This document shows, piece by piece, positions 1,865 through 43,063 of a stretch of 64,000 nucleotides of DNA. Within the stretch, counting starts at the first letter, position 1, and the number at the start of each line of letters is the position of its first letter. A model generated the notes under the pieces. The model worked only from the letters and a program-made list of their open reading frames with translations, searched no databases and was not told where the DNA came from. A program made the position numbers and the translations under genes. This stretch comes from Vitrella brassicaformis CCMP3155 (Eukaryota; Protista; Chromerida), in NCBI GenBank assembly GCA_001179505.1, contig CDMY01000382.1:27524-91523 (forward strand), written 5' to 3'.

Positions 1865-2370
1865 GTCAGTTCCGTGTGCACTCGCCGCGTGTACGAGATC
1901 TGAAAGAACAAAGAGATAGGAATAATGCACCGATCGTGCCTTCGCGCGGTCCTTTCCTTTCCTCACCTTTGTTTCCTGCGAGCTGTCGCAGAGCATCTGC
2001 GAGCTTAGCACACAAAAGGGGAAGGAGCTCTTGCGCGTGATTGGCCTTTCCTTCACTCACACGGTCGCGAGCGGCTCAAGAAATCGCTCAGGCGCATCGG
2101 AAAGGTGCGTTTTCTGAGTTGCTCTGAGGGGAGAGAGAACGAGGTGGAGGTTTCCTGTCCTACCTTGTCACGCGAGCCATCTGTCGACATGCGTAAGATA
2201 ACACGCAACAGCGTAGAGAGAGAAGGCCGCCTCGCTGAGTGCGGGTGTGAATCAGACACTCTCATCTCTGTGTGGCGTGTTTGTGTGTTTGCGTGTTTGT
2301 GGACGGCTCTGATTGGCCACTATTGCAGGGGTGTCACTGGCCGGCGTGACTCGTGTGTGTTATTGCTTGG

Positions 2371-5300
2371 ATGAAGACGTGGAGGCAGCATGCCCGCGGG
2401 CGAGGCCTCTCACCTCAGCTTATGGACAGTGACCGTCCCCTGCTGCGGACAAGCCAGGACAACGACAACCAGTCCGACGTATTACCTACACACTCTCGCC
2501 AGACCCAACGCTCCACACGCTCGACAACTCGCCACGCCCCCCGGCCCGCCAATCGCAAAGACTACGACAGTCTGATCACCCTCAGCGACTCAGACACCGA
2601 CGAGCAAGACAAACAGCAGGGTCGTCACACTCCAGCCCCCCAATCGCTGGGCGCTCCCGCCATGATGACGGACACTTCCCCCCCTGGCGAGCACGGCGAC
2701 CCCACTGCTCGCTCCCCCCTCCCCCTCTCTGCCACTGATATCGGTCCCGAAGGGCAGATCGGTCGCCCGGGTTTGGAGCCAGATGAGCCGCAGCCGCCGA
2801 TGGACGAAGAGGAGACGGCCGAGATGCTGCCTCGGTCCACCACACAGGCGGCCGTCGGCCAGTGGCGGCAGCACTTCGTGAACTCGGTGCTGCGGGCCGA
2901 CCGCGTATCGCCGACCACTTCGCCCCGCATCCGCGAGATGTTTTATCACCACGAGGAGGAGGCGCACGTTCCCACCCGCACCAGCTCACAGGACTTCGCC
3001 ACCGTCGACTGGCGACACGACAGAGTGGCCTATGCGCGGCGTCAGCAGGAGCTGGAGCACTTCCAGGGCTTCTGTGCCACCTGCCGAGTGTACCTGGTCA
3101 AGGCTGAGGGCTGGATCTTCTGCGCGGCCATTGGTTTCATGGCTGCCGTGAGCGCCGCCTACATCGAGGTGGCCGGGGCGTACTTTGCTGACCTCAGGAT
3201 CGGCATCTGCCGAGGCATGTTCTGGATGGATCGCAGGTAGGTAGCCCCCGCCCGGGCGCCACACAAGATATATTATCTATCGAGAGGCAGGCGGCCATGT
3301 CATGATTCTCGTGTGTGTCTGGTCTGTGTGGCTCGTGTGTGTTAGGTATTGTTGCGGCAGTGATTTTGCGGTAGATTTCGCGCACAACCGTTGTCTGAAG
3401 GAGAGCGAGGATGTCATCGACCACCACGACCACCCCAACGAGTTCGACCACACCTCCTGGCTCTCCTGGGCCACAGTCCTGGGCATCAACGAACACAACT
3501 ACCTGGCCGCCTACTTGGCCGACTACCTCGTGTACGTCATCATCGCCATCGTCATGGCCTGCATTGCCGCCTGGCTCGTCCGCTCATACGCCAAGGCCGC
3601 GTCGGGCTCGGGGATCCCCGAGGTCAAGACCATCCTGGGCGGCTTCGTGATGAAGGGCACTCTGGGGGCCTGGACGCTGGCCATCAAGTGTGTGGGGCTG
3701 GGGCTCGCCGTGGCCAGCGGCCTGGCGCTCGGCAAGGAGGGCCCGCTCGTCCACGTGGCCTGCTGCTGGGCGAACCTTCTCTCCAGACTCTCGCTCAAGG
3801 TACCGTACCCGATCACCGCACCCAGCAGTCCATATGGTATGCAGTTTCTGTTTGAGTGTGTTGTGTTGTGTTGTGTCTGCCATGCAGTATCACGACAACG
3901 AGATGAAGAAGCGCGAGCTCATCTCAGCTGCAGCCGCGGCAGGTGTGTCGGTGGCCTTCGGGGCGCCCCTCGGCGGCGTGTTGTTCTCGCTCGAGGAGGT
4001 GTCGACCTACTTCCCGCCCAAGACGCTGTGGAAGAGTTTTTTTTGTGCGGTGGTGGCCGCCCTGACCCTCAAGTGGATCGACCCAAGGAGCACCGGGGCC
4101 CTCACAATGTTCCAAATCGACTACATTTCGCTGCTCGGGTCAGTCAGAAAACAGCAAGGGGAGAGAGAGAGAGAGAGGGACCGTGTGTATGTTTGCGTGT
4201 CTGTGGTATCTCTCTCTCCGTGTGTCTGTCTGCAGGACTTATCAGATCATCGAGCTGATCCCATTCGCCCTGCTGGGTCTGATGGGCGGGCTGCTGGGCG
4301 CGCTGTTCATCCACCTCAACATCCGCTGGTCGGCCAGCAAGCGCAACAACCCCACCATCCAGGCCAGCCCTGTCCTAGAGATGATGATCCTCACTCTTTG
4401 CACGGCCGTCATCAACTACCTCCTTCCCATGATGCGCGGCCCCGCCAGTGTGCTGCTGGAGCAGCTGTTCGGGCGGTGTGGGTCGACGGACAACCCAGAC
4501 ATGTTCTCAATGTGTTCCAAGAGCACTGACAGCTTCACCGAATATGACGTGGACTGGGGCATCTTTCTCTCGCTCTTCGCCGTCATGGTGCTGAGGTTCG
4601 TCCAGGCCGTCTTCACCTTCGGCAGCCCAGTGCCGGCGGGGCTCTTCATCCCTTCTCTCACCGTACAGACAGCCTGCCTGCGGGACGGGGGGGACCCACA
4701 CGCGCATCCGTGTGATGGGATACCTACCCACTTGTGTGTGTGTGTCTTGTGGAGCAGATCGGTGCGTGTTTCGGTCGTTTGGTGGGTCTGCTGATGATTC
4801 GTTTGAACAACGCGATCCCGCTGATCCAGGAGTGCCACAAGTGCATCCAGCCGGGCATCTACGCCATGGTGGGGGCGGCAGCCATGCTCGGCGGCGTCAC
4901 CCGCATGACCATCTCACTGGTAGGTACACGCGCATCCATCGCACCCACACAAACCATCCATCCATCCATCCCATCAGAGAGGCAGCACCGCACATGTGTG
5001 TGTGTCTTGCCTTGTCTTGGTGTGTGTGCAGGTTGTGATAATGTTTGAGTTGACGGGCGGTCTGAGTTACATTGTGCCGTTCATGATATCGGTCATGATA
5101 TCCAAATGGGTCGGCGACGCCTTTTTCCCGGGCGTATACGACTGCTACATCCGGCTCAAGGGATACCCCTACCTGGAGTCGTCAGCTGACGTAACAGCCA
5201 AACCACACACACACACACACACAGCTCCCATCCGTCTGTGCGCATGGCATGGTGTTTGTGTGCAGGTGACCTTCACGGCTCGCGCGTGTGACATAATGGA

Positions 5301-6778
5301 GGACCGGCTGGTGGTCATCACTCTCGAGGGCAACACCATCGCATCCCTCCAGCAAAAACTGACAAGGTCAGCCGCCCCACCCCCCCACTACAGTCTCAGC
5401 AGACACGGATACCCACGTCCCATGCTTGTGTGTGTCTGTGTGCGCAGGTACAGCTTCAGCGGATATCCTCTGGTCAGCACGCGCAAGGACATGATCCTCC
5501 TGGGCTACATCGCCTCCAAGGACCTCGCCAACGCACTCGACAAGGCACTCGAGAACCCCGAGGTCCGCGGCACCACCATGTGCAGATTCCTCAAGTACTC
5601 ACGGGTACTCGGGATGATGTCAGCCGCTAGGGCGAGGGCGAGAGGTGAGTCTGTCAGCGAGCAGCCAAACCACCAACCAATGGCCATCTTCATTCATTGA
5701 TGTGTGTGTCAGCCGCGGCGGGCGCGACCCCTTTGTCGGTGAGTTTTGCGGGTCGGGCGGCGAGTGTGGTCATGACGCCGTCGCCCCGCCAGTTGCCCAC
5801 GGCTGAGGACCTGGTGAGCTATGGCGGGGAGCCGTTTGTGGACCTGAGCGACATAGTGGACGAGCACATCATCCAGCTGGTGCCTGAGACGCCACTCGGA
5901 CAGATATACAACATGTTCAGGCAACTCGGACTCAGGTGAATGCGATGTAGGTGGTGGGGACACATCATCCACTGACTCACACGTGTGTGTGTGTGTGTGT
6001 GTGTAGGTTCTGTCTGCTGACGCGGCACGGCAAGCTCGAAGGCATTCTGACGAAGAAGGTGGGAGCGGAGAGCTGACTGACACAGACAGACAGCCAAGAC
6101 ACATGTGCACCGTACCCCAACGTTGACCCACCTGACCTGCTGTGCTGTGACCGCCAGACGTTTTTGACGCACATGGAGCTGGCTCACCCAGCGGACCTGC
6201 CCAACATCCACACACCCCTGCCCTACCCCACTCCCAACCGACGAGGCCGCGACACACAGATCGAAGTCACAGCAGACTCCCCCGCACACGGGCCTCTGGT
6301 AAGCCAATGTGGCCCACCACACCACACCACACGACAGGACACCAGCGATGAATGCACTGCACAATCCAATTCACCATGTGTGTGTCTGTCTGTGTGTGAT
6401 CCCATCACATAGGTGATGACGGCGAGCTCCGAGCAGGCCCCCCGGATCATTGTGCCGCCCAAGCTGCCCACCACCTATTCCACTCCCGCCCAGCTGACGG
6501 CGCGGCGAGAGAGGGCCGCCACGGAGGCCGGCACATCGCTGCCGCAGACCACTCCCCCAGACATGAACGGCGACGGACACCTGCAGGAGAGCAATGGCTC
6601 GAGCCGGGAGGACGACAGGGCGCGGCTCATCGATGTGGAGACGCCGCCAAGAGACCCCCGGCGGCAGGTCAGCGAGCCGGGCAGCAGCAGATATGGCGGC
6701 AGTGGGGGGAGTGGTGGTGGGGGTGGCAGGCAGAGCGACGGTGACGCGCCTGGCAATACCAAGGAGGGAGAGCCATAG
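2371..6778 (+). CDS. CLC: CLC-family Cl-/H+ exchanger (ClC-3/4/5-like) with C-terminal CBS domains, multi-exon
   Basis: Signature motifs [14 protein letters not shown] (gating Glu), GGVLFSLEE (proton Glu), GLFIPS, GVYDCYI, then CBS-type segments (YSFSGYPLV..., VPETPL...MFRQLGLR). Stop TAG at 6776-6778. Confidence 0.93.
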
Positions 6779-35209: not shown

Positions 35210-38200
35210 ATGACTGAGGAGCTCCCTATTCCAAGAGGTGCCACCAGCAGCTGTGGCGTCACCGGGCCTACGGGTGGCCGCCTGCTGTTCAAGCTTCCGG
35301 GGTGGACGTCAGGAGTCCCTCTGCGAGTCGTCGCTGCGTCGTCGGCTGAGAGCCGGCAATGGGCAGTCCCGGCGACCTTCGAGGCGGCGGATGCTGATGT
35401 GCCTGCTGATCAGCTCAAGCCTCTCACCCACTACCTCTGCCTCTACCCGGATTTGGGGGTCATGCTGGCTCACTGTGGCGACGAGGGGCAGCAGACAGCG
35501 GCCGCTTCGTTCTTCAAGATCATGGGCAGGCTCAAGAAGAGGGCGCTCAAGGGGCGGAAAGTGTCCCGCTCGGCCGACAAGCGTGTCTACTTCGAGGTGC
35601 CGGCAAACGAGAACTGCCTCTATGTCTTCTTCCACGACGATGCTGCGGCATCCGGTCTCCCGGAGAGCGCGGCGAAGTGGTCGCTCATCGACGCAGTCAG
35701 GGATCGTCTCAGGCCGCTGCCAACCGATGAGGAGTACAAGGCTCAGCTTGATCGGTGGCGGAAGATGGCACAGGATCAGGCTGCCCCCAAACACACCGCT
35801 GCTGCTGCTGCTGCTGCCGGTGGTGTGGCGTCCACCGAGCGTGAGAGGGATGACGTGGAGACCTCCCCCAACGGCGCCGGGTCCAACCCCAGCCCCTCGT
35901 CGCCGCAGGCCAAGGAGGCCCCCCAACAACCATCCACCACCAATCAAGACACCGCTGGCAACAACGACGGCACGCAGCGCGGCGGCCATGAAGCGAAGGC
36001 TCCTGCGGCATCAAACGGAGAGGCACAGCAGTCAAGGGAGCAGCCAAAGCAGCAGGAGACCGTCGAGGTCCAGCCACGGGAACCACCAGCACAGGACGAG
36101 GGAGATGCCAAGCCGTCACCTTCCCGCCCCGCCGACGCGCCCGCTGTCGACGAGGCCAAAGCCAAGGAGCCGCCACGGCCGCCCATCGTTGCTGCAGCCA
36201 AGAGCAAGCTGCGGCCGCCAAAGTCGCCGGCACAGAAGGGCACAGATGCCAGCATCGAGGGGAGAGCCGCAGAGAGGGAGAAACAAGCTGAGGGAGCGGT
36301 CGGCAAATCTGGTCAGGTCGCTGCTGCTGCTGCTGCTACTGCTGCAGGAGGCCAAGTCGACGAAGCAGGACCGGCTCACCGTGACAGTGACGTCCCAATG
36401 GAGCCTCCGTGTGCCCCACCACCTGTGGTCATCCCGACCCCCGTTGCCCCGCCTGCAGCACCACCACCACCCCGTGAGGACGCGGTCACGGCGCCACCAC
36501 AACCGCCCGCCCCCCGCTGTCCACCACAGACAGAGGTGAGACAGACGGAGCACCATATGGGCGGCGTCCTGATTCATGCATGCGCCTCTCATCTGTTGTT
36601 TGTGTGTTGATGCTGTGCTGCAGCCACCACCATCACCATCACCATCGCCGCCACGGCCCGCCCCTTGCCCTCCACCGCTGCAGAGAGAGGAGCCACCGAA
36701 GGAGCCACCAAGGCAGCCCAATGGAGCCCAGCCACCTGCTCCTCCCGATGAGGCGACGGTGCCTCCGGCACCACCCCCGCTGATCTTGCCGCCCATTGGA
36801 GTCGGGCAGGCGGAGGCGGAGAGGGCCATGGTTGTTCCTCCCGTCCGAGAGGTCGATGCTGCAGCACATCTTGCCGCTATCAACGGAAGGCGTCGCCCCA
36901 AGAAAACGCCGGCATCGTCGCTGGTGCCGCCACGACCAGACCAAGGAGGGGAGGACGTGAAGCCGCCTGGCGGGGGCGGCAGTGCTGGTGTGTGGCTGCT
37001 GGGGTGTGTGGGAGAGCTCGTCGATCGGGCGGCGGATGCCGGGGCGAGACGAGTAGACATCAGCCATGACTACTGGTGGGAGGGACGAAGGAAGGAATGC
37101 ACGAAGCGAAGCGAGAGACCATTCATTTGATGCATGTGCTGCTTGTGTGTGTGTGTGGGTGGGTGTGGGTGTCTCACCAGGCGGCAGTGCATCGTTGTTC
37201 GGGATGACGGTGCCGGCATGAGTAGCGACGGGCTGAGGGAGAAGCTCAGGAAGACGCCCGTGAGACCTGGCCAAAATGTTCCGCTAAACCAAAGCCCACT
37301 CGAGCGGTATGCTGTGCCGACACATGACATTCATTAGACAACACCCACCCCACTGGCACACGCGTCATGACGCCCGTTGTGTCTGTCGTCACTGATTGAT
37401 GCAGCTTCCCTGGCGCCTTCCAGCGCGCCATTCGATGCCTGAGTGACTCTGCCCTCGTGCTGTCCGTCGCCAAGCACCCAGACACGTCCAAGCAGGAGGC
37501 CGCCATCGGCTATCTCTACAAGCGCACAGACGACAGCAAGGGGCGGGATGTTTATGTGCTGCAGCACGGGTCGGCGACCGTGAAGATCAATCGACATGAG
37601 GGGGGCGGGGGGGAGGGGAGTCGGTTGGATGGGGTGCGTGTGAAGGTTGGGGCCATGGATGAGGTCATGTTGGAGGCCATCAAGGAGAGGACGGGTCTCA
37701 CCAAGGGCGATATAGGTGAGTGAGGCAACCACGCACACACCGTACTGACACCGTACCCCCGTGTGTGTGTGTGTGTGTGTGTGCAGATAAGGAGGTGTGT
37801 CGGCTTGTTTCGCTCACCGTCGACAAGAGGCTCGTGGTCGACCAACGCGTCGAGGCCATGTGCGAGGCGAACGGCACATCCGTCATGCTCTACCGCCTCA
37901 CAAAGCCACACAAATCGTCACATCTACGCATCGGAATGCGTAAGCAGACCACTCTCAACCCGTCACTCACCTGTCCACACACTTCTCCCTCCGCCTCTCA
38001 CATTGACATTCAGGCGCCTTCTCTCCCGAGAATGAGGCGGTCCTCCGCACCGACACTTCGTATCACCTACCCTCTTTCTACCCATCCCCAACTCAGCAGC
38101 AGCAGCAGCAGCAGCAGGAGGACCTCTCGATGTCCCTGCCGGCCGTCTGCGGCACATCCTTTTCCCTCCAGGCCTACCTGGAGCACCTCTACATCATTCA

Positions 38201-41200
38201 GCCCAAGAAGGGCGCGAGGCCGCCCACCATCGTCTACAATGGGCGCAAGATCGAGCACTCGGCGCCGATCGGTGCGACGACTGGCGCGTATGCGAGGGTG
38301 GATTTGAAGACCATCAAGAGCAGGATGGTCCTCAACTATCGCGAGGAGGTGGCCAGCCATGGCATGGGCGGCCTGTGGATTTACTGGCAGCCAGACAAGC
38401 TCCCCTACTGCAGGTAGGGTAGTGCAGAGAAAGAGAGAGCCAACATCGCAACACTAGGTCATGGGGCTCCTCTCTCTTCTTCCTTGTTTGTCCTCATCCA
38501 TCCAGGCTGATCAGTTGTTGGCGCAGTCCATTGGTTGGCGAGCCGCCCCTGTCCCACCCAGTCAGCGACCTCAAAGGCATGGTGGCCTTCCTGAAGCTGC
38601 AGTCCTCCCACGAGCCACACTGCGTCCTCCTGCCGTCCAAGCAAGACTACTCCCTGTCGCCGCAGCTGCAGGAGGACATTCAGGCGAAGGTGCTCGACTG
38701 GGTCGACAGCCACCTCAAGCCCTTCCTCCGAGGCGAGAGACAGTTGCCCCCACCACCCAAGAGGTCACATATGGCGGCGGCCAAGCGTGGCCAGCGGGCG
38801 CTGCCACTGATGGAGGGGAGGAGTCCTTCGCCTGAGGCGTCAGAGGGCGAGGATGAGGGCAAGGAGGGCGAGATGGTCAAGCAGACTTCTGAGGCACCGG
38901 CGGCAGCAGCTGCAGCGGCCGTTTCCAATGCTGGCGTGCCCAAGAGGAAGCCACGGGCGGCGGCCAAGCAGGGCCCCACCAAGGCCCAAGACCTCGCCCA
39001 GCGGAAGGCGGCTACGGTGGCAGCGGCCGGCACCGTCAGCCAAGGCGACAAGAGGGATGGTGCGGTTGTCCCTGCGGCCAAGAGTCGTGTGCGGCCTCAG
39101 CCCTTCGCAGCGGTCATGCAGATGAGCAAAGACATGCAAGACAACAAGGGACGCAGCGAGACAGAGAGCGCAGCAGCAGCAGCAGCAGCAGCGGCGGCCG
39201 GCCACATGGCTGAATCCGACGCAGCTGAGGAGGCTGCTGGATACCAGGTGTGCATCGTCAAGCGCCCACGAGAGGACAAAGAGGAGGGCCAGGGGGAGGG
39301 GGAGGGGGCGCCTGCAGCCGATGACACATCGCCAGCTCCTGAGCCTGTCAAGAAGTCGAAGCGTCGTCGGCTCATCCGGCCACCTCGGACACCCGACAGC
39401 TCCCCACTGGCACCATCAGTACAGCCGACCCCTCCTGCACCACACGAGGGCCAGCGCACGCCCGGTCAAGCCGTCACTTCACCACCAGCACCGGCAGCGC
39501 CACCAGAGGAGTCTGCGAAGGAAGCAGCAAGTGTCACCGGCGAAGACAATCGGCCACAACCTCCGTCGGCACTCGGCCCTCCGCCCGTTGGCCGTGCCGA
39601 CGAGGAGCGTCATTTGCGGCCTCCGCAAGTGACCGTTCCTGTGGGCGATGTGACGAATGGCGTCTCGCCGCCCGAGATCGGTTCCTTTGTGGAGAGCCCC
39701 ATGGGCGTCAAGGACCCCGCGCATCACGGCGAGGAGGACAATATCACACTGGCCGTGGCCGAGGCTGACAAGCACAATGGCGGGCCGCCACACGCAGCGG
39801 ACGCTGAACATGCGGGCTCTAGTAGTGGTGGCGGTGGCGCAGAGCCGATGGAGGCTGACATCCCGCAGGCTGCGTCAGAAGGGCCTCTCGGTGCAGCTGG
39901 CGAGGACAGCAGGCGGAGGGGCGGCCCTCGAGGGCGGCGGAGGGGGCGAGGCAGGAGGGATAGCATGCCACCCCAATCTCACCGTGACGACGGCACCGGT
40001 GCGATGCAAGTGGAGCAGCCACAACAAGCGTCATGTGACGCAGCTCACGACGAGCAGGAGAAGGCGGCGGACGAGGCAATGGCAGACAGACCACTGGGTG
40101 ATGGTGAGCCAGCCCAACCTGCCCAGTGCAGACAGGCGGCAATGGAGACAGGCGAGACGGCCGGAGAGCAACAAGCCGACAGCAACTTGCCAGATAATAA
40201 TGGCCCTTTGTCGGTAGACGTGTCTGCCGCCGTGCCCAGAGCAGAGGCCGAGTTGGCCGTGCCTCTTTTCCCCGAGGCACAGGACGAGCCCAAGAGGGGA
40301 CGGGGTTCACGGGGAAGAGGCAGACCCAGAGGACGGCCCAGGAAACGCGCAGGAGGGAGAGGCAGGGGACGGCGACACTCGGATGCCTCGGCAGACCAGA
40401 CAGAGCTCATCGAGGGCGACGCACCGACACCCCCGTCTGCGGCCCCCATGGCCGCTCTGACCAAGCCCTTGCCGGCTGATGCGCGTGTCAACGAGGAGTC
40501 TGAGGATGGAGTGTCCAAGGGATCACCCGTGGGCAGCGCTCGCGCCGCTGCGCAGCTGCGCATGACCTCTCCCCCACGGGCCTCTGCGGTCGGCACTGCG
40601 ACAAGGGACGAGCCGGACAGAGGCGGGGAAGCAGACGAGGCTGACGCAGCCAACGTGCCGCTACCTGCTCCCTCCCCGGACGCGCCGGTCGCTGAGGACG
40701 CCATGCTTCCTGTGCCGGATGACCGAGAGAGAGAGGAAATCGGTGCGCCCCAGCCTGAGCCCCCCGTCGCCTCTGAGGCGCCCTCTGCCGGTGCACCGGC
40801 AGAGGTTGAGTCGCAAGTGGATGCTTCACCCCCCGAGGCACACCCACCTCTTGCAGCCGCTGCAGCAGCTGTCTCTCAGGCCGCTCAGCCAGCTGTTCTT
40901 GACACCCCTGTCCCCCCGCCGGCGGCTCCCACGATGACGCCTTCCAGTCCACCGCCACCGGTCCAGCCGGCCCCCATTGCCGCTGCTGCTTCGGTGGCAG
41001 CGGAGCCACCACAACCATGCGATGAGCAGCAGCAGCAGCAGCAGGCAATAGTTGACGAGAAGTGGGCGAAGCAAGTGGATGAAGAGCAGCTTCCCCAAGC
41101 CGAAGCAACACCAGCACAAGCACAGCCGCCACCAGCTGCTGATGAGACCCCTCCGGCGATTGAGGCCGCTCTCACCCCCCGTCGGAGAGAGAGGAACAGG

Positions 41201-43063
41201 CCAAGGAGTCGCGCTCCTTCTGTGGTGCCTGAGGGTGCTGAGGTGATCGACCTAGAGGGGGACGATGAGGCGGCGCAACCACAGGCTCCTCCACGTGAGG
41301 CGCCACAACACCCACAAGGCACCTCTGGCCACGCGGAGAGTGCTAGTGCTGGAATGGTTGGAGAGGCGGAGATCGGCGAACCCTACCAGGAGGGTGCTGG
41401 TGGAAGTGAGGTGGCTGCTGCCGCTGCTGCTGCTGCTGCTGCTGGGGCAACGGCTCCGGTGGCGAGCGACATGCGTGGGCTTTCTTCCTTGGACATGCCG
41501 CCACCAGATCCGATCATTCGCCCGCAGGAGGGTCAGAGACGCCTCATCAACGAGATCGCTCAGGCCATCACCGCTGCTCCACCATCCGTCGCCCCGAGTC
41601 AGCCTCCCAGGCAGCCAGGGCCTGTCCCACCCGCTTTCGCTGGCTCCTCTGCTGCAGCAGCAGCAGCAGCAGCTGTCCGTCAGTCCATTCAGCCAATCGT
41701 CCTCGACACCCCTGTGCCCCCATCGGCTGCGCCGATTATGGCGCCTCCCAGTCCACCGCCACTGTTCCGGCCGGGCCCCCCCGCTCCTGCCCCCCCTGCT
41801 GCCACTGCTGCTCCTGCTCCCGCCGGTGGTCGTCAAGCGTCGGACGCCATTGTTATTCAGGACGACGATGAGGAGACAGCCGGTGGTGGCGCGAAGCCGC
41901 CCCCACCTCCTCGCAGGGCTCGGAAGAGAAAGGCCACCGAGGCACCTTTGGCCGCTGCTGACCAGGAGGGACCTGGCCCTTCTCGTGCACGCCAGGGAGC
42001 TGATGGTGGTGGTGGCGGTGAAGCCGCTGCTGCCGCTGCGGCAGGGCGACCGTCGCCCTCGTCCGGTGGGATGAGCTGCGAGGAGCGTCGGCAGCTGTTG
42101 CGGCAGCAGTACTGCTACGAGCCGACGCCGCCCATCCCCCAGATACCGCCGCACCTCAACCCCGCACAGAGACGCGGCCACATCGACAGCATCACCTGCG
42201 GATCACACACCGTGGTCAGTCCGGCTGCTGCTTCGGCACTCGCCGCGTCGGCTCGGTCGGCAAGGGCAGCACCAGCGGCTTACTCGCACCCTTCACCAGC
42301 AAGTGGCAGCATCGGGCCCCCAGCACGCGCGTCGAGGGATGGCAGCAGGGGCAGCCCGGCACCACCACCTGGAGTCGTCTCACCCCACCCCAGCCGTGTG
42401 CCAACCAGACCACCGGCTCGCGTCTCACCCGGATCCCACTCTCAGGCCCCTCAGCAAGAGAGAGATCCGTTCGTCCCGGCTGCCTGGGCAGCGCTGCGGG
42501 ATCGATCCTACGGTTCAGCTCCTGGCCTGCGGTCGAGTATGGCTGTTCCTCCCGCCCCTGGCGGCACGAGTGGTGTGGGGCCGCTGCTGCCGCCAGCATT
42601 ATACGCTAGGACGGGGTCGGTCATGCAGTCGAGTAGGGAGCTCAGCCTGGGGCCGGTCACCATGTCCCAGATGGGCAGATACGCAACGCCCGCCGCCAGC
42701 GAAATGCACCCCCACCACCGCCGGCACCACCAGCACCCTGCGCGGCCAGCGACACGACCTCCGTCACAAGAGAGGAGTGCGTATCCGTATGCAGCCCAGC
42801 ATGCCATGCCCCAGCCGGCACCCTTGCAGCAGCAGCAACAGCAGCAGCATGCCTACCAGCCTCACACACTCCCCCAAGCGGCGAGACCCTTGGCGGCATA
42901 CGGGCAGCAGCAGCAGCACACGGGAGGGCAGATGCCGGCGTTTGTGAGGGCGTTTCAGGTGGCCAGCGTAAGGCCGGGCGGAGGGGGGGCTCTTGTTCCT
43001 CGCCTGTCGCGTCCCCCTGACTTGCTGCAGCCGTCATGGACGGGGGGCTCTAGTAGACAATAG
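35210..43063 (+). CDS. Very large MORC-like protein: N-terminal unknown domain, degenerate GHKL ATPase plus S5 fold, long disordered tail with AT-hook-like motifs
   Basis: Spliced core: VWLLGCVGELVDRAADAGARRVDI, VVRDDGAGM, LERFPGAFQRAIRCLSDSALVLSV, NGTSVMLYRL, SLQAYLEHLYI, GGLWIY...RLI; order and spacing follow the MORC ATPase/S5 motifs. Final exon is the 1510-aa ORF 38531-43063 containing RGRPRGRPRKR. Confidence 0.72.

What the first reader, a model, noticed from the sequence alone, without database searches (positions are those of the whole stretch)
36960..38760. MORC-like GHKL module with a degenerate ATP-binding site (candidate pseudo-ATPase chromatin factor)
Seen: MORC-type motifs in order after manual splicing. 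W..G...ELVDRAADAGA has Arg where GHKL enzymes have the Mg/ATP-binding Asn (ExxxN box); DDGAGM is intact; the Gly-rich lid (IGxYGxGFK in MORCs) reads LERFPGAFQ; then GTSVMLYRL, SLQAYLEHLY and GGLWIY...RLI of the S5 fold. Known: MORC ATPases dimerise on ATP binding to clamp DNA and silence genes, and Toxoplasma MORC with HDAC3 and AP2 factors controls sexual development. Inference: an ATP-independent MORC paralogue, lacking the Kelch/CW domains, acting as scaffold or dominant-negative regulator in a free-living apicomplexan relative. Most of the protein is low-complexity, so it is likely annotated as hypothetical.
Basis: partly seen in the sequence, partly recalled or inferred. Interest (0 to 1): 0.75.

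Follow-up and report, generated by a model that had tools for sequence, protein, structure and literature searches.

The report
Diverged MORC-like module, dead ATP site
A 2441-residue, mostly disordered protein of the alga Vitrella brassicaformis carries a very diverged copy of the MORC chromatin-ATPase module in which the magnesium/ATP-binding residues are replaced, so it probably cannot use ATP; no relative was found in any other organism.

Summary
The motifs are real.

- **GHKL match:** Pfam HATPase_c_3 passes its cut-off (28.4 vs 25 bits) but covers only the N-box and G1 box (residues 571-616).
- **ATP site:** In every tool alignment the Mg-binding Asn position holds Arg577. The general-base Glu573 and the DxGxG box are kept. 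In the best-supported register the G2 box reads E..P.A and its Lys is Gln641.
- **MORC type rather than MutL:** This rests on modest evidence. There is collinear similarity to Vitrella's own Kelch-MORC gene (z 5.8 overall; after G1 z 2.7, p about 0.008). The MLH1 control is not significant after G1.
- **S5 half:** A protein-language-model search of exon 6 puts a Morc6_S5 cluster first (0.95). Pfam, PDB and my chain test do not confirm the S5 half.
- **Fold:** The module could not be folded here.
- **Relatives:** No orthologue or paralogue was found. No Kelch or CW domain is present.

Verdict: probably a lineage-specific, ATP-dead MORC-derived module in a likely nuclear, disordered protein. The scaffold or dominant-negative role is untested. 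Interest is moderate.

The parts
35210..43063 (+). Whole gene: 7 exons (35210-36535, 36624-37075, 37181-37306, 37405-37715, 37787-37939, 38014-38413, 38506-43060 plus TAG stop), encoding the 2441-residue protein P0001 = CEM08009.1 / A0A0G4F6G7
   Evidence: annotated protein. (exact mapping; all six introns GT-AG, 71-105 nt).
35210..35780 (+). N-terminal region of ordinary composition (residues 1 to about 190), fold unknown
   Evidence: Composition. No Pfam family. No paralogue in the genome. AlphaFold2 on the single sequence gave pLDDT 40, uninformative.
36993..37046 (+). GHKL motif I (N-box helix), W566 to A583. Glu573 (37014-37016) is kept; Arg577 (37026-37028, CGG) sits at the Mg-binding Asn position
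   Evidence: HATPase_c_3 alignment 571-616. Alignment to E. coli MutL (ELVEN vs ELVDR). Block match to the Kelch-MORC N-box exon: score 43, 0/300 shuffles.
37203..37220 (+). GHKL motif II / G1 box, DDGAGM (residues 601-606), intact
37302..37423 (+). Position of motif III / G2 box across intron 3: E634, P637, A639 at the three Gly positions and Q641 at the Lys position
   Evidence: The register comes from the ungapped block 640-659 against the G2 exon of the Kelch-MORC gene (10/300 shuffles). Residue roles are from the MORC2 structure paper PMC5811534.
37405..37939 (+). Second half of the presumed GHKL domain (exons 4 and 5, residues 636-789), including G768-T769 (37873-37878)
   Evidence: Chain test against Kelch-MORC exons e4-e7a: z 3.2, 7/1000. 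No Pfam or PDB match on its own. No paralogue.
38163..38760 (+). Presumed S5-type transducer region (residues 840 to about 1008). It includes SLQAYLEHLY, GGLWIY, RLI across intron 6, and K968 in LPSKQDY (38630-38650)
   Evidence: Language-model first hit is a Morc6_S5 cluster at 0.95 for exon 6. Exon 7 head gave noise. Pfam, PDB and the chain test are not significant. Taking K968 as the transducer lysine is my inference.
40292..40375 (+). Arg/Gly-rich basic patch with two RGRP cores (residues 1519-1546), AT-hook-like
   Evidence: No Pfam AT_hook match, so this is a motif-level reading only.
40850..41932 (+). Internal duplication in the tail. The QP[AI]VLDTPVPP modules lie at 40886-40918 and 41690-41722. 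Each is followed by a hydrophobic-acidic, SUMO-interaction-like motif (41240-41269 and 41846-41875). The second copy is followed by a basic patch (41912-41932)
   Evidence: Local self-alignment, score 191.

Best explanation
The gene encodes a lineage-specific, very diverged descendant of a MORC-type GHKL module, possibly with its S5 transducer. The module is residues about 560-1000 and sits inside a long, mostly disordered and probably nuclear protein.

Shown:
- The N-box helix and G1 box are recognisably GHKL.
- The general-base Glu573 and the adenine-binding Asp601 with its G1 glycines are kept.
- The Mg-coordinating Asn is Arg577.
- In the best-supported register the G2-box glycines are E, P and A, and the alpha-phosphate Lys is Gln641.

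Inferred:
- The module cannot bind Mg-ATP, so it cannot perform the ATP-driven N-terminal dimerisation (DNA clamp) of active MORCs.
- It survives as a structural or interaction domain.
- DNA or chromatin contact, if any, comes from the basic RG/RGRP patch and other short motifs in the tail.
For: - **Gene model:** verified exon by exon and identical to the public protein.
- **Real reading frame:** exon 7 is an open frame of over 1500 codons at 65% GC. My own estimate of about 2.5% stop codons per random codon at this GC content puts the chance of that near 1e-17.
- **GHKL:** HATPase_c_3 is above its cut-off. The register is the same against MutL in PDB and against NCBIfam models.
- **Effect of losing the Asn:** MORC2 N39A abolishes ATP binding, dimerisation and silencing. 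That paper also gives the roles of the Glu, Asp, G1, G2 and Lys residues (PMC5811534).
- **MORC type:** ordered-exon similarity to Vitrella's own Kelch-plus-GHKL gene (L019) gives z 5.8 (0/2000). After G1 it gives z 2.7 (8/1000). The MLH1 control after G1 gives z 0.56 and the reversed query z -0.25.
- **N-box flank:** the W.LG.V..LVD.A stretch matches the MORC exon (43, 0/300) but not the MLH1 or sacsin-type N-boxes.
- **S5:** the first language-model hit for exon 6 is a Morc6_S5 cluster at 0.95. The next hits are HATPase_c_3, SACS and HSP90 clusters.
Against: - The profile match covers only about 45 residues.
- The S5 half has no Pfam, PDB or pairwise support.
- The atlas tool itself warns that its first family is often wrong when the other top hits do not share it. 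The second piece, the exon 7 head, gave noise.
- The comparator L019 is itself identified only by partial HATPase_c_3 (22.7 bits), weak Kelch hits and its motifs. Its pieces hit no MORC in PDB.
- No structure of the module could be predicted here.
- There is no orthologue, so neither conservation of Arg577 nor purifying selection could be tested.
- Expression was not checked.
Confidence: 0.6

Rival explanations
1. Only a short GHKL relic (N-box and G1) survives in an otherwise unrelated, fast-evolving disordered protein. The later MORC and S5 motifs are chance resemblances, there is no folded module, and the protein's function lies elsewhere, or the gene is decaying.
For: - Profile and PDB matches stop at residue 616.
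- The S5 half is not significant in the chain test.
- No homologue of exon 6, of residues 555-1010 or of the exon 7 head was found.
- Single-sequence AlphaFold2 of exon 6 gave pLDDT 48.
Against: - Residues 555-1000 have normal, order-like composition, unlike the rest of the protein.
- The post-G1 GHKL half is similar to the MORC exons at p about 0.007.
- A Morc6_S5 cluster is the first atlas hit at 0.95.
- The reading frame is intact over 7 exons.
Confidence: 0.2
2. The module derives from another GHKL family, either MutL/MLH-type or a Topo VIB-like protein. Meiotic Topo VIB-like forms are known to have degenerate ATP sites.
For: - The best single-sequence matches in PDB and NCBIfam are MutL and a BbrUII/HgiDII-type enzyme, over the N-box and G1.
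- The G1 block scores higher against Vitrella MLH1 (36) than against the MORC exon (28).
- Degenerate GHKL domains are documented for MTOPVIB, TOPOVIBL and Rec104 (papers listed).
Against: - P0001 matched only HATPase_c_3 in Pfam, so no MutL or Topo VIB transducer family.
- The MLH1 N-box and G2 blocks and the MLH1 post-G1 chain are at null level, while the MORC ones are not.
- Vitrella has a normal MLH1 elsewhere (L001).
Confidence: 0.1
3. The module is still an ATPase that uses a non-canonical site.
For: The general-base Glu573, Asp601, the G1 glycines and a candidate transducer Lys968 are kept.
Against: The Asn is the Mg ligand in GHKL enzymes, and its replacement in MORC2 abolishes binding (PMC5811534). 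Here the G2 glycines and the Lys are lost as well.
Confidence: 0.05

Closest known systems
MORC (Microrchidia) GHKL ATPases: human MORC2/3/4 and the apicomplexan Kelch-MORC (TgMORC, PfMORC)
   Same: - N-box helix with the W..G...ELVD.A.DA pattern.
- DxGxGM G1 box.
- Similar lid length.
- A post-G2 strand resembling that of Vitrella's Kelch-MORC.
- S5-like motifs in MORC order; this last point is by my reading plus the atlas hit.
- Large nuclear-type protein.
   Different: - The Mg-binding Asn is Arg.
- The G2 glycines and Lys are replaced.
- No Kelch propeller and no CW zinc finger.
- Morc6_S5 is not detected by Pfam.
- No orthologue outside Vitrella.
- About 75% of the protein is low complexity.
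Vitrella's own Kelch-plus-GHKL gene at G000:C261, about 79500-85400 (L018/L019), the likely orthologue of apicomplexan MORC
   Same: Same genome. Collinear block similarity over N-box, G1, G2 and the following strands.
   Different: - It keeps the Asn (HLVDNA) and the G2 box with its Lys (YGMGFK).
- It has Kelch exons upstream.
- Its intron positions differ from those of this gene.
- Pairwise BLAST similarity between the two is not significant.
Degenerate GHKL domains of meiotic Topo VIB-like proteins (MTOPVIB, TOPOVIBL, Rec104)
   Same: Precedent for a GHKL-derived module that has lost its ATP-binding motifs but is kept as a structural partner.
   Different: A different GHKL branch. No Topo VIB transducer match here, and no SPO11 link was examined.
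MutL/MLH N-terminal domain
   Same: Best single-sequence match over N-box and G1.
   Different: No similarity after G1. No DNA_mis_repair or MutL_C domain.

Membership tests
MORC ATPases | GHKL (Bergerat) ATP-binding domain recognised by HATPase_c_3 | tested here: met
   28.4 bits against a cut-off of 25, but only profile positions 7-55 of 137. Six-frame search of the locus gave E 0.024.
MORC ATPases | Motif I Asn that coordinates Mg2+ (Asn39 in MORC2) | tested here: not met
   Arg577 is at this position in the Pfam, MutL and Kelch-MORC alignments. The codon is CGG, inside exon 2.
MORC ATPases | Motif I general-base Glu and motif II DxGxG (G1 box) | tested here: met
   Glu573; D601-D-G603-A-G605-M606.
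MORC ATPases | Motif III G2 box (GxxGxG) and the following Lys | tested here: not met
   E634, P637, A639 and Q641, in the register fixed by the block 640-659. That register has modest support (10/300 shuffles).
MORC ATPases | S5-fold transducer domain after the GHKL domain (Morc6_S5) | tested here: inconclusive
   No Pfam hit, but Vitrella's Kelch-MORC pieces give none either, and the six-frame genome search with this family returned nothing at all. Atlas first hit is a Morc6_S5 cluster at 0.95. Chain test z 1.0. The fold could not be predicted.
MORC ATPases | Transducer Lys that contacts the gamma-phosphate (Lys427 in MORC2) | not testable with these tools
   K968 in LPSKQDY is a candidate by my reading only; no tool alignment reaches it.
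Apicomplexan-type MORC | Kelch propeller and CW-type zinc finger flanking the ATPase (PMC11620747) | tested here: not met
   Neither is in P0001. No zf-CW or Kelch hit anywhere on contig C382.
MORC ATPases | C-terminal coiled coil | not tested
   No coiled-coil predictor was run; the tail is Ala/Pro-rich.
MutL/MLH | DNA_mis_repair transducer and MutL C-terminal dimerisation domain | tested here: not met
   Only HATPase_c_3 was found in P0001 at E up to 1. The MLH1 post-G1 chain is at null level.

The most novel reading that the evidence does not exclude
Vitrella keeps, beside its active Kelch-MORC, a natural ATP-dead MORC paralogue that works as a regulator or scaffold of MORC-dependent silencing, for instance by binding the same partners or DNA without clamping. 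This would be the first described MORC pseudo-ATPase.
Probability: 0.15. Interest if true: 0.6.

Novelty: new variant of a known kind. Interest (0 to 1): 0.4.

Why it matters
MORC ATPases silence genes by ATP-driven dimerisation. In apicomplexan parasites a single Kelch-MORC gates sexual and stage development. A naturally ATP-dead MORC-derived module in a free-living relative would show that the fold can be reused without its motor. It could also point to partners or surfaces of the MORC module that act independently of ATP.

The value is limited for three reasons. The gene is confined to one non-model alga, its S5 half and its fold are unconfirmed, and nothing is known about its expression.

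Tried and rejected
**Searches for relatives, all blank**
- Exon 6 by phmmer against 1.84 billion representative proteins found only the protein itself and a spurious cadherin-repeat protein.
- A word search with residues 555-1010 among proteins of 1342-4271 residues found only the protein itself.
- The exon 7 head among proteins of 835-2656 and of 262-833 residues found nothing else. The second search was also meant to catch transcript-derived fragments that could be folded; none exist in the collection.
- A scan of metagenome contigs found nothing.
- Own-genome searches with exons 4 and 6 and with the N-terminal domain found nothing.

**Family and structure searches**
- Morc6_S5 in the whole genome returned nothing, not even at the Kelch-MORC locus, so that test is insensitive here.
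- Single exons of this gene and of the Kelch-MORC gene found no MORC chain in PDB.
- AlphaFold2 on single contiguous pieces, the N-terminal domain and exon 6, gave pLDDT 40 and 48. I did not send these models to fold search.

**Statistics and rejected ideas**
- A first chain test on all open frames with tiny BLAST segments was too noisy. I replaced it with the ordered-exon test.
- I rejected the idea that alternative splicing hides a canonical N-box or lid. The N-box is inside one exon, and introns 2 and 3 encode nothing glycine-rich in any frame.
- The Tiamat/sacsin-type GHKL family (paper; loci L004 and L007) is a different branch; its N-box block scores at null level.

I sent no typed or joined spliced sequence to any tool. 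Exons were searched by reference, and the public protein P0001 by its id wherever the tool accepted it. Folding the joined module (residues 555-1010) was left out because P0001 exceeds the 1200-residue limit and the exons share no single reference.
Full report
**Source and gene model**

The window is contig C382:27524-91523 of a 72.7 Mb, 1064-contig genome. The protein found at the locus is from Vitrella brassicaformis CCMP3155: CEM08009.1, UniProt A0A0G4F6G7, named only "unnamed protein product / Uncharacterized protein".

I first spliced the region by hand from the sequence and the ORF list. The public 2441-residue protein P0001 proved identical to that model. A script mapped all 2441 residues onto 7 exons:
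- 35210-36535
- 36624-37075
- 37181-37306
- 37405-37715
- 37787-37939
- 38014-38413
- 38506-43060, then a TAG stop

All six introns are GT-AG and 71-105 nt long. Exon 7 alone is an open frame of over 1500 codons at about 65% GC. My own estimate is about 2.5% stop codons per random codon at that GC content, which puts the chance of such a frame near 1e-17. This is a maintained reading frame.

**Checking the observation**

The N-box lies wholly inside exon 2, and Arg577 is a CGG codon (37026-37028), three changes away from an Asn codon. The introns next to the N-box and the lid encode nothing that could supply a canonical Asn or a glycine-rich lid.

**What the profiles say**

- *Pfam on P0001.* Only HATPase_c_3 is found, at 28.4 bits (cut-off 25), aligned to residues 571-616 and profile positions 7-55 of 137.
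- *Exon by exon.* Only exon 3 gives a weak hit, at 18.3 bits.
- *PDB sequences.* Only MutL matches the same 46 residues, at E about 1. Its ELVEN aligns with ELVDR, which puts Arg577 opposite the Mg-binding Asn and Glu573 opposite the catalytic Glu.
- *NCBIfam.* The same segment matches MutL and a BbrUII/HgiDII-type restriction enzyme model.
- *After residue 616.* Nothing matches any library. There is no Morc6_S5, DNA_mis_repair, Topo VIB transducer, Kelch or zf-CW.
- *Rest of the contig.* Genome-wide six-frame searches place no zf-CW and no Kelch hit on contig C382.

**Other GHKL genes in the genome**

HATPase_c_3 hits eight loci in six frames. Reading them gives:
- MLH1 (L001)
- two Hsp90-type genes
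- a PDK-like kinase
- two sacsin/Tiamat-type genes
- this locus
- one MORC-like gene at C261 (L005, L018, L019)

The C261 gene keeps the Asn (HLVDNA), a DNGFGM G1 box and a YGMGFK G2 box. It has Kelch hits just upstream. That fits the Kelch-plus-ATPase architecture published for apicomplexan MORC (PMC11620747). It contains an assembly gap, and no CW domain was found near it. I used it as the in-genome MORC comparator. Its own identification rests on partial profile hits and motifs, and its exon pieces hit no MORC chain in PDB.

**MORC type or another GHKL type?**

Plain tblastn of residues 540-1010 against the C261 locus is not significant. I then scored each defined C261 exon, by reference, as one ungapped segment against residues 555-1010. 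The segments had to fall in order, and each exon was shuffled to give the null.

| Test | Result |
|---|---|
| All C261 exons | observed 293 vs 234.5 ± 10.2; z 5.7-5.8; 0/2000 |
| Exons after G1 | z 2.7; 8/1000 |
| Second half of GHKL | z 3.2; 7/1000 |
| S5 half | z 1.0; 181/1000 |
| MLH1 blocks, all | z 3.7 |
| MLH1 blocks after G1 | z 0.56 |
| Reversed query | z -0.25 |

Block by block:

| Block | Score | Shuffles reaching it |
|---|---|---|
| MORC N-box flank | 43 | 0/300 |
| MLH1 N-box | 23 | at null level |
| Sacsin-type N-box | 20 | at null level |
| MLH1 G1 | 36 | 0/300 |
| MORC G1 | 28 | 3/300 |
| MORC G2 and following strand | 33 | 10/300 |
| MLH1 G2 | 20 | at null level |

The MORC N-box match pairs WFLGAVAHLVDNA with WLLGCVGELVDRA. 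G1 is generic. The MORC G2 block is in the register that aligns F640-Q641 with F-K. So the evidence favours a MORC-type origin of the GHKL half, modestly.

**The S5 half**

- A protein-language-model search of the ordered part of exon 6 (94 residues) puts a cluster of Morc6_S5 domain proteins first, at 0.95. Shuffled sequences reach that about once in 100. The next hits are HATPase_c_3, SACS and HSP90 clusters, all GHKL families.
- The tool warns that a first family not shared by the other top hits is often wrong, and only 142 of 256 features are shared.
- The head of exon 7 gave noise at 0.77.
- Pfam Morc6_S5 finds nothing, but it also finds nothing in the C261 gene or anywhere in this genome, so it is insensitive here.
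- By eye, the order SLQAYLEHLY, a short strand with NG, GGLWIY, RLI, GMVAFL and SKQDY follows what I remember of MORC transducer domains. That is a lead from memory, not a test.
- Lys968 as the gamma-phosphate lysine is likewise inference.

**The ATP site**

The MORC2 structure paper gives the residue roles (PMC5811534):
- Glu35 is the general base.
- Asn39 is the Mg ligand.
- Asp68, Gly70 and Gly72 form motif II.
- Gly98, Gly101, Gly103 and Lys105 form motif III.
- Lys427 comes from the transducer domain.

N39A abolishes nucleotide binding, dimerisation and HUSH silencing without unfolding the protein. In P0001 the equivalents are Glu573, Arg577, Asp601/Gly603/Gly605, Glu634/Pro637/Ala639/Gln641, and possibly Lys968. 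Loss of the Asn is certain given the alignments. Loss of the G2 box depends on a register with modest support. Together they make Mg-ATP binding very unlikely. Since MORC dimerisation goes through the closed ATP lid, the module is also unlikely to clamp or to heterodimerise that way.

**Rest of the protein**

Only residues 1 to about 190 and about 555-1000 have ordinary composition. The protein as a whole is 16% Ala and 14% Pro.

The tail holds:
- an Arg/Gly patch with two RGRP cores (1519-1546)
- several basic, NLS-like patches
- an internal duplication of a QP[AI]VLDTPVPP module, each copy followed by a hydrophobic-acidic stretch that looks like a SUMO-interaction motif

Pfam does not recognise any of these. 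They suggest a nuclear, nucleic-acid-associated protein, but this is motif reading.

**Relatives**

None were found:
- exon 6 against 1.84 billion representatives (the one extra hit is a cadherin-repeat artefact)
- residues 555-1010 among long proteins
- exon 7 head in two length ranges
- metagenome contigs
- own genome, for exons 4 and 6 and the N-terminal domain

The length filters of the word search, and the use of one exon for the exhaustive search, leave room for very diverged orthologues. I found no paper that mentions the accession. None of the MORC paper searches turned up a MORC with a natural dead site. Degenerate GHKL domains are known in Topo VIB-like meiotic proteins.

**What could not be done**

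The decisive test, folding residues 555-1010 and comparing the model with MORC structures, was not possible. Single-piece predictions were of low confidence, so I sent no model to fold search. No MORC sequences from other organisms could be obtained, so no profile-profile comparison or tree was made.

**Verdict**

This is most likely (about 0.6) a lineage-specific MORC-derived module with a dead ATP site, in a disordered, probably nuclear protein. Because the defining catalytic residues are not met, I file it as a variant derived from the MORC kind, not as a MORC ATPase. The functional proposals remain untested, and the published N39A behaviour argues against a lid-mediated dominant-negative mechanism.

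Earlier notes of this scan near the window, and notes on other GHKL genes of this genome, concern other genes and did not affect this reading.

Noticed in passing
L018/L019 = G000:C261:74000-89999 (GHKL and S5 exons at L019 about 1960-5400; Kelch hit at C261:79587-79868): Vitrella's likely orthologue of apicomplexan Kelch-MORC. The N-box Asn, G1 and G2 boxes are intact, the exons are many and short, and an assembly gap (run of N at L019 about 3029-3329) lies inside the ATPase region. No zf-CW hit is nearby. Pfam Morc6_S5 does not detect its S5 exons.
   Followed up: partly
window 40850-41932: Internal duplication in the disordered tail: two copies of a QP[AI]VLDTPVPP module, about 28 of 36 identical. 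Each is followed by a hydrophobic-acidic motif resembling a SUMO-interaction motif; the second copy is also followed by a basic patch.
   Followed up: partly
window 40292-40375: Arg/Gly-rich patch with two RGRP cores, AT-hook-like. Not recognised by Pfam.
   Followed up: partly
window 37076-37180: Intron 2 is 105 nt, a multiple of three, with a single in-frame TGA. The six-frame HATPase_c_3 search therefore read straight through it. Like many introns here and at C261, it contains (TG)n/(GT)n runs.
   Followed up: no
L001 = G000:C656:125133-128438: Vitrella MLH1 with a canonical GHKL domain in one 332-codon open frame. Used as the MutL-type control.
   Followed up: partly
L004 (G000:C294) and L007 (G000:C760): Two sacsin/Tiamat-type GHKL loci (ELIQNAxDN N-box). 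Earlier notes of this scan describe GHKL-DNA methyltransferase fusions of this type in the same genome; I did not check whether these are the same genes.
   Followed up: no
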